DNA of 63,604 nt, the filler included, from Octopus bimaculoides (lineage: Eukaryota): NCBI RefSeq assembly GCF_001194135.2. It is 6 parts of 6 records of this genome, joined end to end, with 100 filler letters (N's around TTAATTAATTAA, not from the genome) between each part and the next. Parts side by side here need not be neighbours in the genome. Positions count along the whole stretch, not along the records: positions 53,245 to 58,696 come from NC_068988.1; 5 more parts are not named here. The stretch is one strand, 5' to 3'. Positions 53,145 to 58,796 of the stretch are shown one piece after another (position 1 is the first letter of the stretch; every line of letters begins with the position of its first letter). A program made the translations under genes and the position numbers. Under the pieces are notes generated by a model. The model saw only the letters and a list, made by a program, of their open reading frames with translations. It did no database searches and was not told the DNA's origin.

Positions 53145-53361
53145 NNNNNNNNNNNNNNNNNNNNNNNNNNNNNNNNNNNNNNNNNNNNTTAATTAATTAA
53201 NNNNNNNNNNNNNNNNNNNNNNNNNNNNNNNNNNNNNNNNNNNNAGAAAATTAAGGAGTTATCTCCCCTATAATAACAAAGACGAAAGCTAACGAGATCC
53301 TAAAGACCTAATAATAGTTATGTATGTGTTTTTTCGTGTTTTGTTCGAAAGGTAACCACCC

Positions 53362-53427
53362 CTGAAGAAGTGCCAAATGTCTAAATCCAATGGACCAGTC
53401 ACTGGATAAGTTTGGCACAGAAATGTG
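53362..53427 (+). ncRNA. Hammerhead-like motif with an unusually long stem II, degenerate
   Basis: CTGAAGA | A | GTGCCAAA-(33 nt, itself hairpin-prone)-TTTGGCAC | A-GAAAT-GT-G; stem I and the cleavage site are not intact. Confidence 0.4.
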
Positions 53428-53500
53428 GTAAATAAATCGATATATCGAATTTGAAGTCTCTGTCTCTTTTGAATATGAAAATTTAAAAGTTTAAAAACCT

Positions 53501-53551
<51 letters not shown>

Positions 53552-53556
53552 ATGTG

Positions 53557-53591
<35 letters not shown>

Positions 53592-56427
53592 GTGTATATA
53601 TAAATCCTATTTTACTAATTGTAGTAATTATAATTTGTAATTATTAATTGTGTATTAATTAGTACGAAAGTATTTTAGCTTCTTTGATATATATTATATA
53701 TTTTATGTATTCTAGTCTTAATTCTTTAGACTCTAAAATTTCTTAGATTTTAAAATTCCCAGGAAATGTTTATAATACAGTTAATTTTTTTATTATGATT
53801 TAAGCTAAAATACATTTTGATTTTATAAATAAAACTTTTATTCATGTTTAAATAAAACGCCCATTCATGTTTATATATGTCTTTATTCTATTACTTTTCT
53901 TTACGCCATTATTTTCACGCGACTTAATTCTAATGAATGCTAAGTTAATAGTATAACGTTTAAAATTTTAGTTTAAACTAAAACTTCGATAAGATAAGTA
54001 TTGCAGTTATCTTCAGTAATATTTTTAAATGTTTTTCTTTTATTTATTGGTAAAATAAGTATTTTTATATAAATTCATTTGATATTTATTGTTAGTCGGT
54101 ATATATACATTCATTTTATTATTATTATTATTGTATTTTGACCCGAAGATTAGCTATATTTTTGAATAGAATTGATTTTCGATCGGTTTATTTTGAATCG
54201 ATTTGATTTTTATTTTATTTTCTATTTGAAAATGTGGTTGTGAAACGCGTGTAGTCGTTTTATTATTTTAATATTTATGACTTTGTATTTTTATTATAGG
54301 GCTTTTTAGTGTATCTACTTATCAAATCTTTTTATATATGACTGTGGATTTTCATTGATTAATTCAATAATTGTAGTTTTTTATCTCTGAATTATATATC
54401 TATATATTATATATTGTGAAATTTAATTNNNNNNNNNNNNNNNNNNNNNNNNNNNNTGTATGTATGTATGTATGTATGTATGTATGTATGTGTGTGTTAA
54501 CTGGAATAATAAAAAATTATGATGAATATATACTTGTTAAATATTCCCTCCAAACACAGTACTAAATTTCTGGCTTAATCATGGAAATATACGAACTGAA
54601 GTTATATCATCATTCATTAAAATGAAGAAGTAGCAGTTATAAAAGAACTTACAAACAGTGCATTGTAATTGGAAAATGACAGAAAGAGCCAGAATTTGAG
54701 AAGCCCATGATGTTTGTTTTTCTTTTCTTTTTCTTTTTTACATTCTGTAGAGTTGTAATAGTTTAAAATAGCATTGAAAACAATTTTAAATAATATTCTG
54801 AAAATGAGTACTATAACAATGGATACTGATTTATGTACAATGCTTGCAATTCTTAGGGGAAAGAGTTACTCAATACTATCAAATCCATACTTGACTAGTA
54901 CTCTACTATATCAAATTTAAAAGGATGATAGGCAAAGCTGACCTCAGTAGCATTAGAAAATTATTTGACGTAATACCACATAAATATGAAGAAAATACCT
55001 TTCATACAAATTGTTTTTGCAGAGGGCTTGACAAAAAGGAAAAGTGTTTATGTTTAGATCCTTCATACAATGGGATTTATTGAACTAAACGAACGTTGAA
55101 ATACACATGTACATATGTTACATATTTTCTCTGGGCACAGCCGATGTATTTTGTCATTGTCAGTGGAATCAAACACAGGCAGTCTCATAAAAGAATCTGT
55201 TGTTTATGTGAAACCAAAATAGAATAAATGGAAAGTGGCATGTGAAGCCTACTACAGTAATGTTTTCTTGTAAAAGAAACAACTTTACAGAGTACTTCAA
55301 TAAACCAAAATTAAATATTAAAAAATGAGTTACAATAATAATATTACATATACAAAAGAAATCATACGCTTGAGACTGTGTACTCCTGATGAAAACGAAG
55401 ATACAGTTAACAAGGGAAAACAATCCTACCGCTCCACCTATAACCATATTCTTCATTTCTTTCAATAGATCCACTATAAGATACTTTCTACTGTATTTCC
55501 ATTGAAGAGAAGAAACTGAAAGAATCAATGAAGAAGTTAAAATGCCGGAGGCAACCATTTCTAAAGAGTGGTAGAACACATTTACCACCTCCCTAGCAAT
55601 GGCATTTATAGCAACGAAAAGTTACAACTAAAATATAAACTATTCTGAAAGTTTTAAAACGGAAGCAAAAATCAAACACCAGTAAAAATAAACATCGAAC
55701 AAATGTCAAATAGAATTTATGATAGAGTATTGAAGAAACTTCACTGGATAAGGGTATAGAAATTGAAATTAATGGTATCCTTTTGCGGAAATACTTCTTT
55801 ATATATATATATATGGACAAATATCCTCCACATATATATCAGTGTGTATACATATATTTGCGTGCGTATGTATATATGTATGTAAATATATATATNNNNN
55901 NNNNNNNNNNNNNNNNNNNNNNNNNNNNNNNNNNNNNNNNNNNNNNNNNNNNNNNNNNNNNNNNNNNNNNNNNNNNNNNNNNNNNNNNNNNNNNNNNNNN
56001 NNNNNNNNNNNNNNNNNNNNNNNNNNNNNNNNNNNNNNNNNNNNNNNNNNNNNNNNNNNNNNNNNNNNNNNNNNNNNNNNNNNNNNNNNNNNNNNNNNNN
56101 NNNNNNNNNNNNNNNNNNNNNNNNNNNNNNNNNNNNNNNNNNNNNNNNNNNNNNNNNNNNNNNNNNNNNNNNNNNNNNNNNATATATATATATATATATA
56201 TAGATAGATAGATAGATAGATGCAAAATTCTCTCTAAGAGATCAACACAGTAGTTGTACTAACAAGTAACGTTCATAGCCACTTCAACATGACTGTTCTT
56301 TCGAAAGGACTTTGCTGCAGTATTTTAACTCCAAGAGGACATCTCCTCTATCTGGTTAACGATGCATAGCTGCATCCAAGATATTGTGAGCAGAGGAGTG
56401 AAACTCTACCACCTTCTAGTGATGGGA

Positions 56428-56477
56428 CCAACAGACCAGCCTGCTTTCAGGCTACTTTTACTTCACTTCAGTACTGG
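56428..56477 (-). ncRNA. Type I hammerhead motif, copy 1
   Basis: CCAGTA | CTGAAGT | gaagtaaaagtaGCCT | GAAAG-CA-ggc-TG-GTC | TGTTGG. Confidence 0.65.
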
Positions 56478-56813
56478 ACACCTCGTCTGCTAGTGACCGC
56501 AGTAGCTCACTTCTGCTTACAATATATATAATTTCAAGTGACATACAGTCACTGATTTTGCAACAAGCAAAAATGCTAGTTCTAAAATCTCTCTAAGAGT
56601 AGCTGTACTAACATGTAATTTTCATACCCACATCAATATGTCTGTCTATCCGAACGAATTTTACTGTGATATTTTAACTCTAAGAGGACATCTCTAGCTG
56701 GCTAATGATGCTTGTTGCCTGCAACACGCATCATTAGCCAGTGACTATGTTGCTTGAAATTATATATATTGCGAACAGAAGTGATCTGCTGACATCTTTA
56801 GCAGACGAGGTGT

Positions 56814-56863
56814 CCAGTACTGAAGAAAGGCAAAAATAGCCTGAAACCAGGATGATCTGCTGG
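56814..56863 (+). ncRNA. Type I hammerhead motif, copy 2 (best-preserved core)
   Basis: CCAGTA | CTGAAGA | A | AGGC-aaaaata-GCCT | GAAAC-CA-gga-TG-ATC | TGCTGG; predicted cleavage after C56857. Confidence 0.78.
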
Positions 56864-57116
56864 TTCCTTTGCTAGAAGGTAGTAGGGGTTCATACCCATG
56901 CTAGCAATATCTCTTGGTGTTAAAAAATCGCAGTAAAGTCTATTCAAAAGGAACAGTCATGTTGAAGTGGTTATGAACATTATAGCTACTGTGTTGATCT
57001 CCTAGAGAGATTTTAGAACTAGCACTTTTGCTTGTTGCAAAATCAGCGACTGTATGTTGCTTGAAATTATATAGTGAGTAGAAGCAAGCTACTACCATCA
57101 CTAGCAGACGAGGTAT

Positions 57117-57165
57117 CCAGTACTGAAGAAAACAGAAGTAGCCTGAAAATAGGCTGGTCTGCTGG
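57117..57165 (+). ncRNA. Type I hammerhead motif, copy 3 (best-preserved extended stem I)
   Basis: CCAGTA | CTGAAGA | A | aacagaagtaGCCT | GAAAATA-ggc-TG-GTC | TGCTGG; predicted cleavage after C57159. Confidence 0.7.
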
Positions 57166-57379
57166 TCCCGTCGCTAGAAGGTGGTAAATGTTCACTCCCC
57201 TGCTCGTAATATCTCGGCTGCAGCTGTGCCTCATTAACCAGCTAGAGGTGATGTCCCTCTTGGGGTTTTAAAAATATCACAGTAAAGTCCGTTCAAATGG
57301 CTACAAACATCATTTATATATCTGATATATTATAAAATTTACTCTGTGTGTGTGAGAATGCCTTTCCTCAATGCATGGC

Positions 57380-58250
57380 CAACCTGTTTGTGTGTGTGTG
57401 TGGATCAATCTGTACCAAATTTTGCTGTCTGGAAATTCGCTTTAAAGATAAACGATTCTGAAATGCTTTTTAATTGTGACAATGAAACAAGAAGTTTAAA
57501 GTAAAAGAAACAGTAAGGTTTCTAAATAACGAAAGGTCTTCATATGGACACATGCTTATACACTGTAGGATATCTTTCAATTTATATGATAAACTTTATA
57601 AATTTTAAAGTTCAATATTTCCGTGACATAAGTTAGAGATATCGACATAGTTATTCAAATAATTGTTCATGGAATCTACCTAATAAAATTAGCTAGAGTA
57701 CACTTGATATTTCATATTTAAATCTGCTTGGATATTGGTCCTGCCTCAGATTCGAAATCGAATCTACAATTTTCCCCTAGCCATGCAACTTATTGCTCTG
57801 TCAAGGAGTAACGAAGATTTATATGTTCCCCACTTCACTCTTAATCTTTTCTATGCCATGAAAAGTTGAAATAGATAATGAGTGACCTGCATTAATTCAT
57901 CCATTGTTAGAGTGGTATATCTCTTTTTCTACCTGCTCTGCATAAGCACGGTATCTATAAAATTCACTGTCTATGTGTGTGTATTTTCTCTTTGCACGGA
58001 CAAATCGCCGGATCAATCTGTACCAAATTTGGCATGAAGGTTTTTCATTACTCGGAGGAGATACTTAACTTTTTTCAAAAACAGAAATATGTTCTACATG
58101 TTTGTTGTATACGTCGGTTTTATTTTTCTCTTTAAAGGCAAACGATTCTGATTGAAGCAAACACAATATTGAATAATTCTCAGTCATACGTTTACAATAC
58201 CAACTCTTTTTCTTAAAGTAAAGATAAACGCTTTTTAATTGTGATAATTT
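57380..58250 (+). repeat. Two related segments (about 57380-57490 and 57960-58250), possibly Helitron-like non-autonomous elements
   Basis: ggatcaatctgtaccaaattt, tttaaag..aaacgattctga and gctttttaattgtga.aat recur. The accaaatttggcatg motif is reminiscent of invertebrate Helitron-like repeats. Confidence 0.4.
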
Positions 58251-58796
58251 AGGTTTAGTACTTACCACCAAAATATATTTCTCTTGGGAAATATAAGGGT
58301 AATGAGGCCTTCAATCTATGGATCCCATTAATCCCATCTGACCATCTCTATGAAGTTAAGCGGCTCCCGTTCCCAGTGAAACTAAGTTTTGTTTTGTCCA
58401 TAAACAAATCTCAAGTACAATGTCTCAAAGTTGTTGGACTTAACTTTGCTTCTCTCATGGGCAATTATATATAGGATGTTCGCGAGCTGGAAGTCCTGAA
58501 ACACTTTTCTTTTTTTGTACACCAATTAAAGGACACACTGAAAACACTGTATATTTAGAAGTTCTACAAAATTAAGCTGTGATTGATTCCAGGATTTGTT
58601 TTGAAAATTTTCTTTATACTCATGACATCTGATAGACTCTTTCTGAAAATATATGTTTTATCAGAATAAATATATTTACTTTACCATTCTTACATTNNNN
58701 NNNNNNNNNNNNNNNNNNNNNNNNNNNNNNNNNNNNNNNNTTAATTAATTAANNNNNNNNNNNNNNNNNNNNNNNNNNNNNNNNNNNNNNNNNNNN

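What the first reader, a model, noticed from the sequence alone, without database searches (positions are those of the whole stretch)
56224..57303. Retrozyme-like ~360-nt repeat with a full type I hammerhead ribozyme
Seen: a non-coding ~360-nt unit occurs about 3.5 times (two forward, two reverse). The three copies that span the relevant part all carry the same motif. Their consensus is CCAGTA-CTGAAGA-A-AGGC(loop)GCCT-GAAAC-CA-GGC-TG-GTC^TGCTGG: 6-bp stem I, 4-bp stem II, 4-bp stem III and a GUC cleavage triplet. This is more complete than the minimal PLE hammerheads elsewhere in the window, and no RT or PLE ORF is adjacent. Established: non-autonomous hammerhead tandem repeats of a few hundred nt (newt satellite 2, Schistosoma Sm-alpha, cricket pDo500 and related retrozymes) are transcribed, self-cleave to monomers and can form circular RNAs. 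Inference: this is a cephalopod family of that kind. Each copy here has some mutations, so this locus may be inactive while better copies lie elsewhere. I cannot tell whether the family has been described.
Basis: partly seen in the sequence, partly recalled or inferred. Interest (0 to 1): 0.88.

Follow-up and report, generated by a model that had tools for sequence, protein, structure and literature searches.

The report
Decayed hammerhead-bearing retrozyme-like repeat cluster
A 1.1-kb cluster of four worn-out copies of a ~360-nt non-coding repeat carries the remains of a self-cutting "hammerhead" RNA motif; this kind of mobile element is already known from many invertebrates, so the locus is a dead copy of a known type, not a new mechanism.

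Summary
The repeat is real: four copies of a ~360-nt non-coding unit lie at 56224-57303, two on each strand, joined head to head. Three copies carry a hammerhead-like motif on the same sense strand.

- Helix I (6 bp) is intact in all three copies.
- A 4-bp helix II exists only in copy C.
- The 15.2-16.2 pair of helix III is broken in all three copies.
- One core reads CUGAAGU instead of CUGAAGA.
- Rfam reports no hammerhead at E<=10.

The motif is still not chance. No match as good as copy C occurred in 20 Mb of composition-matched random sequence. A covariance model built only from four experimentally active retrozyme hammerheads (coral, mussel, two axolotl) ranks copies C and D first and second in the piece (15.7 and 10.7 bits).

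Unit size, tandem order, lack of ORFs, 42% GC, a rod-like fold with the motif at its tip, and a head-to-head layout next to a microsatellite all fit a non-LTR retrozyme moved by Penelope-like elements.

Copy number, expression, cleavage and host organism could not be tested. Best reading: an inactive relic and a new member of a known kind, of modest interest.

The parts
56224..56583 (-). Copy A: the only full-length unit (360 nt), 94% identical to the 4-copy consensus
56584..56722 (-). Copy B: partial unit (consensus positions ~212-365), head-to-tail with A; lacks the hammerhead part
56698..56746 (.). Head-to-head junction between the two arms: a near-palindrome (CTGGCTAATGATGC..GTTGC / GCAAC..GCATCATTAGCCAG). 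To its right, the sequence jumps to consensus position ~39 at a shared CAG
   Evidence: sequence read directly; the template-switch origin is inference
56739..57015 (+). Copy C: unit from consensus position 37 to 365, with 47-nt and 10-nt deletions, 86% identical to the consensus
57008..57297 (+). Copy D: unit positions 1-291, head-to-tail with C, 3'-truncated, 89% identical to the consensus
56814..56863 (+). Best hammerhead-like motif (copy C). Helix I 56814-19/56858-63; CUGAAGA 56820-26; extra A 56827; helix II AGGC 56828-31/GCCU 56839-42 with a 7-nt loop; GAAA 56843-46; helix III 56846-49/56853-56 with a C.A mismatch. Predicted cut after C56857 (triplet AUC)
   Evidence: (15.7 bits, E 0.0025)
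57117..57165 (+). Hammerhead-like motif of copy D: core CUGAAGA and GAAA intact, no extra A, helix II 2/4 pairs, helix III 3/4. Predicted cut after C57159 (GUC), 302 nt downstream of the cut site in C
   Evidence: (10.7 bits, E 0.084)
56428..56477 (-). Hammerhead-like motif of copy A: core mutated to CUGAAGU, helix II 3/4 pairs, helix III 3/4, triplet GUC. Predicted cut after C56434 on the - strand
   Evidence: (4.2 bits, E 7.9)
57069..57212 (+). Long imperfect hairpin ('rod') of copy D with the hammerhead motif at its tip; helix I continues outward (57101-57113 with 57167-57177). The same rod lies in C (56766-56910) and in A (56525->56381, - strand)
56182..56221 (.). (TA)n(ATAG)n microsatellite that abuts the 3' end of the left arm, preceded by a 286-N assembly gap (55896-56181)

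Best explanation
This is a dead insertion of a non-autonomous, non-coding retroelement of the non-LTR retrozyme type. It has a ~360-nt unit whose RNA carries a type I hammerhead ribozyme at the tip of a long self-paired rod.

Inferred life cycle in a working copy, by analogy with validated retrozymes:
1. A head-to-tail multimer is transcribed.
2. Each hammerhead cuts after the GUC triplet. Helix I is CCAGUA/UGCUGG, the core is CUGAAGA...GAAA, helix II is short with an A-rich 7-nt loop, and helix III is short and nearly palindromic, so two units may pair as a dimer. The products are ~360-nt monomers.
3. A host RNA ligase closes the monomers into circles.
4. The reverse transcriptase/endonuclease of a Penelope-like element copies the RNA back into DNA as partial tandems.

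At this locus two partial tandems (B-A and C-D) sit head to head beside a microsatellite. The copies have since drifted 6-14% from their consensus, mostly by transitions. Every hammerhead now has at least one disabling change, so the locus itself is most likely inactive.

Shown here: the repeat anatomy, the non-random hammerhead-like geometry, the absence of coding capacity and the rod-like fold. Inferred: cleavage, circles, mobilisation by Penelope-like elements, and the existence of better copies elsewhere.
For: 1. Four copies of one unit lie in two head-to-tail pairs.
2. Copy C satisfies a hammerhead descriptor: exact CUGANGA and GAAA, UH, 6-bp helix I, 4-bp helix II, helix III with one mismatch, and a 0-1 nt insertion. 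That descriptor found 0 hits in 20 Mb of composition-matched random sequence, an upper bound of about 1e-4 per 360-nt unit on both strands.
3. Model R1 was built only from four experimentally self-cleaving retrozyme hammerheads taken from the supplement of PMC7229834. It ranks C first (15.7 bits, E 0.0025) and D second (10.7 bits) in the 5.4-kb piece, each over the full model length. In 25 kb of bacterial DNA that contains the same CCAGTACTGAAG...AGCCTGAAA strings, those sites do not score and the best hit is 9.8 bits.
4. Helix I is paired in 18/18 cells and continues outward for 11 more pairs (91% paired). Four of the changes there are G-C to G.U and keep the pairing.
5. The 366-nt consensus folds as a circle at -119.9 kcal/mol, z = -4.85 against shuffles, 64% paired, with the motif at the tip of a ~45-bp rod. 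The consensus folds better than copy A, the only complete unit (-104.3, z -2.75). This is as expected if the copies decayed from a structured ancestor.
6. The hammerhead fold lies 4.3 kcal/mol above the predicted minimum in the consensus. The gap is 2.3-7.4 kcal/mol in the validated coral, mussel and axolotl ribozymes.
7. There are no ORFs above 55 aa in the unit, no Pfam hits, no tRNA, and GC is 42%.
8. Unit size matches mussel retrozymes (350-390 bp). Low GC and tandem organisation match the published description.
9. Partial tandems with an inverted 5'-truncated copy and a preference for microsatellites are the published signature of insertion by Penelope-like elements. Retrozymes are reported to derive from the terminal repeats of those elements.
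10. An extra A between A9 and helix II is tolerated in a natural hammerhead, that of CChMVd (+).
Against: - Rfam's hammerhead families give no match at E<=10 on the piece, on 1.1 kb, or on 81 nt around copy C.
- No single copy has all three helices intact, and the 15.2-16.2 pair is unpaired in all three.
- With only three related copies there is no compensatory change in any helix of the motif, and the shuffle control is uninformative.
- A competing hairpin, UAGCCUG-AAAN-CAGGCUG, is paired in 95% of cells against 75% for helices II and III.
- RNAalifold does not predict the hammerhead fold. It finds a second alternative in which the cleavage site is buried in a 10-bp helix.
- The rod folds about as well on the antisense strand in two of three copies. 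It is therefore a DNA-level inverted repeat and not proof of selection on the RNA.
- TRF does not call the array, and it would not pass the 'two consecutive complete hammerheads' rule of the 2026 preprint.
- Copy number, transcription and cleavage are untested.
Confidence: 0.6

Rival explanations
1. It is an ordinary hairpin-forming interspersed or local repeat (a foldback, satellite-like or other non-autonomous element). Its resemblance to a hammerhead is coincidental, or at most a long-dead vestige. The conserved feature would be the long inverted repeat with the UAGCCUG-AAAN-CAGGCUG hairpin, and no ribozyme ever worked in this family.
For: - Rfam finds no hammerhead.
- The alternative hairpin is better preserved than helices II and III.
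- Alifold prefers non-hammerhead folds.
- The rod is as stable on the antisense strand in two of three copies.
- There is no covariation.
- About 16 chance matches to the relaxed descriptor would be expected in a genome of a few Gb (my own estimate from base frequencies).
Against: - CUGAAGA directly abuts one strand of a 6-bp helix and UC directly abuts the other, with GAAA and a helix II in register. Nothing as good occurs in 20 Mb of random sequence.
- Given the hairpin, the remaining coincidences still multiply to roughly 1e-5 (inference).
- An independent model puts the two + strand copies first and second in the piece.
- The motif sits in exactly the kind of repeat where such ribozymes are known: tandem, ~360 nt, non-coding, low GC.
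Confidence: 0.2
2. The units are not a self-standing retrozyme. They are pieces of the terminal repeat (pseudo-LTR) of an autonomous Penelope-like element, left as a tandem/inverted insertion scar after 5' truncation. The hammerhead would then belong to the autonomous element.
For: - Penelope-like elements carry hammerheads in their pseudo-LTRs. They insert as partial tandems with inverted 5'-truncated copies, and prefer microsatellites.
- Retrozyme consensus sequences match the termini of those elements in Xenopus.
- Penelope-like elements are reported in cephalopod genomes.
Against: - The units follow each other with a ~350-360-nt period and no coding sequence between them.
- No RT or endonuclease remnant occurs in the piece.
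- The motif has normal-sized helices I and II. The minimal variants said to typify those elements have very small helices.
Confidence: 0.15
3. The head-to-head arrangement, and possibly the copy count, is an assembly artefact of a draft scaffold. Reads from a simple tandem array or from dispersed copies would have been collapsed or mis-joined.
For: - The piece has two N gaps, one directly to the left of the cluster.
- Complex insertions of Penelope-like elements are known to be mis-assembled from short reads.
Against: - The four copies differ from each other by 14-25% and by distinct indels, so they are not collapsed duplicates.
- The junction has a specific near-palindrome with a microhomology jump, as expected of a real template switch.
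- This rival concerns the layout only, not the nature of the unit.
Confidence: 0.05

Closest known systems
Non-LTR retrozymes of metazoans (Cervera & de la Pena 2020, PMC7229834), especially the Mytilus galloprovincialis retrozyme
   Same: - Non-coding unit of ~360 nt (mussel 350-390 bp) in head-to-tail copies.
- GC below 50%.
- A type I hammerhead layout with a 6-bp helix I, a short helix II closed by a 7-nt loop, and a very short near-palindromic helix III.
- A predicted highly self-paired monomer.

   Different: - No sequence similarity to the mussel unit.
- Every copy here is mutated.
- There is an extra base between the core and helix II in two copies.
- Only 1.4 and 1.8 units per arm, arranged head to head.
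- Expression, circles and cleavage are not shown.
Classical satellite hammerheads (newt satellite 2, Schistosoma Sm-alpha, cave cricket pDo500)
   Same: From my own knowledge, as a lead only: tandem units of a few hundred nt, a type I hammerhead, a helix I with an internal loop about 6 bp from the core, an A-rich loop 2, and a weak helix III that favours action as a dimer.
   Different: Those are high-copy arrays with demonstrated transcripts and cleavage. Here copy number and activity are unknown, and Rfam's Hammerhead_1 model, which covers them, does not match.
Hammerheads in pseudo-LTRs of Penelope-like elements
   Same: - A type I hammerhead within a terminal repeat.
- Insertion architecture of partial tandems plus an inverted 5'-truncated copy, often at microsatellites.
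- Proposed common origin with retrozymes.
   Different: No RT/endonuclease ORF lies between or next to the units. The helices are of normal size, not minimal.
Rfam Hammerhead_1 loci reported in the giant squid genome (235 loci; PMC6962438)
   Same: If the host is a cephalopod, this shows that type I hammerheads are already annotated in that group.
   Different: Those loci pass Rfam's model; this one does not. Their repeat context was not described in that paper.
CChMVd (+) hammerhead with an extra A10
   Same: One extra A between A9 and position 10.1, which lowers the cleavage rate only moderately.
   Different: It is a type III viroid hammerhead and is unrelated in sequence and biology.

Membership tests
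Hammerhead ribozyme, type I | Conserved core CUGANGA ... GAAA(Y) ... (R)UH in the right order and register | tested here: inconclusive
   CUGAAGA is present in C and D, CUGAAGU in A. GAAA is present in 3/3. GAAAY/RUH holds fully only in C (GAAAC/AUC); A and D have GUC but GAAAG/GAAAA. C and A carry one extra base after the core.
Hammerhead ribozyme, type I | Three helices around the core, with helix I open-ended | tested here: inconclusive
   Helix I is 6/6 in all copies and extends outward. Helix II is 4/4 only in C. Helix III is 3/4 at best, with 15.2-16.2 unpaired in all three. Only a reconstructed ancestor has all helices.
Hammerhead ribozyme, type I | Match to curated covariance models (Rfam Hammerhead_1 and its clan) | tested here: not met
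   No hammerhead family at E<=10 on 5.4 kb, 1.1 kb or 81 nt.
Hammerhead ribozyme, type I | Match to a model built from experimentally active retrozyme hammerheads | tested here: met
   R1 scores: C 15.7 bits (E 0.0025), D 10.7 bits (E 0.084), A 4.2 bits. C and D are the top two hits of the piece. The control DNA maximum is 9.8 bits. The match is weak but specific.
Hammerhead ribozyme, type I | Covariation supporting the helices | tested here: inconclusive
   There are three sequences only and 0 pairs with changes on both sides. Several G-C to G.U changes keep helix I paired.
Hammerhead ribozyme, type I | Self-cleavage at the predicted site | not testable with these tools
   Needs in vitro transcription of the consensus and of copy C.
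Non-LTR retrozyme | Short (150-450 bp) head-to-tail repeats, each unit with a hammerhead | tested here: inconclusive
   The unit is ~360 nt. C and D are head to tail, with motifs 302 nt apart; B-A has one motif. The array is very short and TRF does not call it. It fails the 'two consecutive complete hammerheads' rule of the 2026 preprint.
Non-LTR retrozyme | No coding capacity, no LTR/PBS/PPT, GC below 50% | tested here: met
   The longest ORF in the unit is 55 aa, with no Pfam hit and no homologue in the 5.8-billion-protein search. GC is 42%.
Non-LTR retrozyme | Monomer RNA predicted to be highly self-paired | tested here: met
   Consensus as a circle: -119.9 kcal/mol, z -4.85, 64% paired. 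The rod is not strand-specific.
Non-LTR retrozyme | Multi-copy family dispersed in the genome | not testable with these tools
   No collection within reach holds the host genome. Pattern scans gave chance hits only.
Non-LTR retrozyme | Abundant linear and circular unit-length RNAs | not testable with these tools
Penelope-like element (autonomous) | RT plus GIY-YIG endonuclease ORF between the terminal repeats | tested here: not met
   No such ORF or Pfam match in 53245-58696.

The most novel reading that the evidence does not exclude
The locus is a relic of an undescribed retrozyme family that is still active elsewhere in this genome and makes ~360-nt circular RNAs. Its hammerhead would be an unusual working variant: an extra A between the core and helix II, and two built-in competing folds (a 7-bp hairpin that consumes helices II and III, and a 10-bp helix that buries the cut site). 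These folds could act as a switch between cleavage during transcription and a stable, uncleaved circle.
Probability: 0.25. Interest if true: 0.45.

Novelty: new member of a known kind. Interest (0 to 1): 0.3.

Why it matters
If the family is confirmed genome-wide, it would add another animal group to the hosts of ribozyme-bearing circular-RNA retroelements. It would also give a further case for studying their link to Penelope-like elements. It would not change the picture, because such elements are already reported across invertebrate phyla, including molluscs. This particular locus is most likely a non-functional relic. Its practical use is as a seed sequence to find the family's intact copies.

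Tried and rejected
- Rfam at permissive thresholds on three nested ranges gave only microsatellite-driven miRNA hits and noise.
- I tried several routes to more copies:
  - Exact-pattern scans of the metagenome, viral and prokaryote collections gave 0-2 hits, about the number expected by chance. Those hits do not score with the hammerhead model.
  - A search of the 5.8-billion-protein database with the three antisense pseudo-ORFs, hoping for spurious ORFs called on other copies, gave nothing.
  - An exact look-up of the 139-aa neighbouring ORF, to identify the source, gave nothing.
- Similarity to the mussel retrozyme: none.
- tRNA/SINE origin: no tRNA-like gene.
- Strand asymmetry of folding, as evidence for selection on the RNA, was inconsistent (D yes, A and C no) and I dropped it.
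- Higher conservation of the hammerhead region (84% against 76% elsewhere, p 0.01) is inflated by misaligned copy ends. I do not rely on it.
- Target-site duplications: none recognisable at 56224 or 57303.
- The scripting machine was lost, so I could not compute sense and antisense z-scores of the consensus rod.
Full report
**Observation**

The piece 53245-58696 is AT-rich, microsatellite-rich, non-coding DNA with two N gaps (54429-54456 and 55896-56181). Repeat finding, multiple alignment and a BLAST of the derived consensus show four copies of one unit between 56224 and 57303.
- Copy A (56224-56583) is complete at 360 nt and 94% identical to the consensus.
- Copy B (56584-~56722) covers only consensus positions ~212-365.
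- Copy C (~56739-57015) starts at position 37 and has 47-nt and 10-nt deletions.
- Copy D (~57008-57297) covers positions 1-291.

A and B lie head to tail on one strand, and C and D lie head to tail on the other. The two arms meet head to head at a near-palindromic junction (56698-46). The copies differ from the consensus by 6-14%, mostly by transitions, and by separate indels. They are therefore old and independent, not assembly duplicates. No further fragment of the family occurs in the piece.

**The hammerhead-like motif, copy by copy**

All three copies that include the region carry the motif on the same sense strand.

Copy C (56814-56863) reads CCAGUA-CUGAAGA-A-AGGC-AAAAAUA-GCCU-GAAA-CCA-GGA-UGA-UC^UGCUGG. 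Helix I has 6 bp and helix II has 4 bp. Both core boxes are intact. There is one extra A after the core, a C.A mismatch at the 15.2-16.2 pair, and the triplet is AUC.

Copy D has an intact core and GUC and no extra base. Helix II is reduced to 2 of 4 pairs and helix III to 3 of 4.

Copy A has CUGAAGU in place of CUGAAGA, 3 of 4 pairs in helix II, and a G.G at 15.2-16.2.

Pair counting on the three copies gave these results:

| Helix | Cells paired |
|---|---|
| Helix I (6 bp) | 100% |
| Outward extension of helix I (11 bp) | 91% |
| Helix II | 75% |
| Helix III | 75% |

The 15.2-16.2 pair is unpaired in every copy, and no change on both sides of any pair was seen. It is a reasonable ancestor, because GAAAC...GUC is the usual natural form and AUC is essentially absent from natural hammerheads. 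It is not observed in any copy.

**Is it more than chance?**

I wrote a descriptor loose enough to accept copy C: exact CUGANGA and GAAA, UH, 6-bp helix I, 4-bp helix II with a 3-20-nt loop, a 4-position helix III with at most one mismatch, and an optional 1-nt insertion. It finds only copy C in the piece. It finds nothing in 20 Mb of random sequence generated from the repeat's dinucleotide frequencies.

Rfam is negative. No hammerhead family reaches E<=10 on 5.4 kb, on 1.1 kb, or on 81 nt around copy C.

I then built a covariance model from the four hammerheads shown experimentally to self-cleave in the retrozyme paper's supplement: coral Amil224, mussel Mg353 and axolotl Ax353 and Ax330. With filters off, the results were as follows.

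| Copy | Rank in the piece | Bits | E-value |
|---|---|---|---|
| C | 1 | 15.7 | 0.0025 |
| D | 2 | 10.7 | 0.084 |
| A | 9 | 4.2 | 7.9 |

The C and D matches cover the full model length.

As a control I used 25 kb of bacterial DNA fished out because it contains the same CCAGTACTGAAG...AGCCTGAAA strings. Those sites do not score, and the best hit is 9.8 bits over part of the model.

The resemblance is therefore weak in absolute terms, but specific.

**Competing folds**

The segment GCCUGAAA(N)CAGGC is self-complementary. A 7-bp hairpin, UAGCCUG-AAAN-CAGGCUG, uses the 3' strand of helix II and most of helix III. It is paired in 95% of cells, better than helices II and III. RNAalifold prefers this hairpin, together with a 10-bp helix (ACUAGCAGAC with GUCUGCUGGU) that buries the cleavage site.

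This does not count against a ribozyme on its own. In the reconstructed consensus the hammerhead fold lies 4.3 kcal/mol above the predicted minimum. The same gap is 3.6, 7.4 and 2.3 kcal/mol in the validated coral, mussel and axolotl ribozymes.

**The whole unit**

The 366-nt consensus, folded as a circle, gives -119.9 kcal/mol (shuffles -93.5 +/- 5.4; z -4.85), with 64% of bases paired. It forms a ~45-bp imperfect rod whose tip is the hammerhead region. Copy A alone gives -104.3 (z -2.75). The consensus folding better than copy A, the only complete unit, fits decay from a structured ancestor.

The rod is an inverted repeat at the DNA level. Z-scores for sense and antisense were -2.97/-1.12 for D, -2.92/-3.22 for A and -2.04/-2.12 for C. 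I therefore do not claim strand-specific selection.

The unit has no ORF above 55 aa. Its pseudo-ORFs hit neither Pfam nor the large protein database, and there is no tRNA-like part.

**Context and likely origin**

The left arm ends against a (TA)n(ATAG)n microsatellite. Both arms are 5'-truncated at the centre, with their 3' ends pointing outward.

The literature describes exactly this for insertions made by Penelope-like elements: partial tandems, an inverted 5'-truncated copy, and a bias for microsatellites. Animal retrozymes are thought to be mobilised by these elements and to derive from their terminal repeats.

The central junction is a near-palindrome that coincides with a small hairpin of the unit. 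It then jumps to consensus position ~39 at a shared CAG, which looks like snap-back plus template switching during copying. This is inference. No target-site duplication is recognisable.

**Mechanism proposed**

The following steps are inferred by analogy.
1. Multimeric transcripts of intact family members fold co-transcriptionally into the hammerhead, possibly as dimers through the near-palindromic ACCAGGCUGGU of helix III.
2. They cut after GUC.
3. The ~360-nt monomers are ligated into circles by a host ligase and settle into the rod, in which the alternative pairings keep the ribozyme off.
4. The RNA is occasionally reverse-transcribed and inserted by a Penelope-like element's enzyme.

This locus is a decayed product of that cycle. 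Copy C might retain residual activity. Copies A and D most likely do not.

**Comparison with what is known, and novelty**

The closest described system is the non-LTR retrozyme family of metazoans (PMC7229834). It includes a mollusc example of nearly the same unit length and a similar hammerhead build, although there is no sequence similarity to it.

A giant squid genome paper lists 235 Rfam Hammerhead_1 loci without further study. I found no paper in the searchable library that describes retrozymes in cephalopods.

If the host is a cephalopod, which I could not verify, this is a new member of a known kind. The membership features that could be tested are met or inconclusive. The Rfam match is not met. 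The decisive features (copy number, RNA, cleavage) were out of reach.

**Limits**

- Only three related, decayed copies were available.
- No public collection within reach holds the host genome.
- The scripting machine was lost.

Noticed in passing
window 58330-58500 (+): A decayed, frame-shifted fragment of a Helitron-type (Pif1-like) helicase C-terminus (FPVKLSFVLSINKSQ...FSHGQLYIGCSR). The best solved-structure match is the Helraiser transposase 7lcc (E 8.8e-6), followed by PIF1 helicases. Pfam gives nothing.
   Followed up: partly
window 57402-57483 and 58010-58248 (+): A second small repeat. Three blocks (GGATCAATCTGTACCAAATTT..., ...AAAGATAAACGATTCTGA..., ...GCTTTTTAATTGTGA...) recur in the same order at 88-100% identity. 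They are spread over ~240 nt in the second copy, so this is probably another interspersed element with insertions.
   Followed up: partly
window 56698-56746: Near-palindromic head-to-head junction between the two arms of the repeat cluster. It coincides with a small hairpin of the unit and is followed by a jump to another unit position at a CAG microhomology. It looks like a snap-back/template-switch scar.
   Followed up: partly
window 55896-56181 and 54429-54456: Assembly gaps (286 and 28 N), both flanked by TA/TG/TGTA microsatellites. The inverted repeats I1-I4 reported by the repeat finder are artefacts of the N run.
   Followed up: yes
window 53510-53580, 55801-55896: Sub-threshold Rfam matches to mir-297, mir-3149, mir-466 and similar families fall entirely on (TA)n/(TG)n microsatellites and are artefacts of low complexity.
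   Followed up: yes
window 56843-56856, 57145-57158, 56448->56435 (-): The helix III segment ACCAGGCUGGU (consensus) is nearly palindromic. Two units could form a 10-bp intermolecular helix III with one G.G mismatch, as proposed for hammerheads that act as dimers. I did not test this.
   Followed up: no
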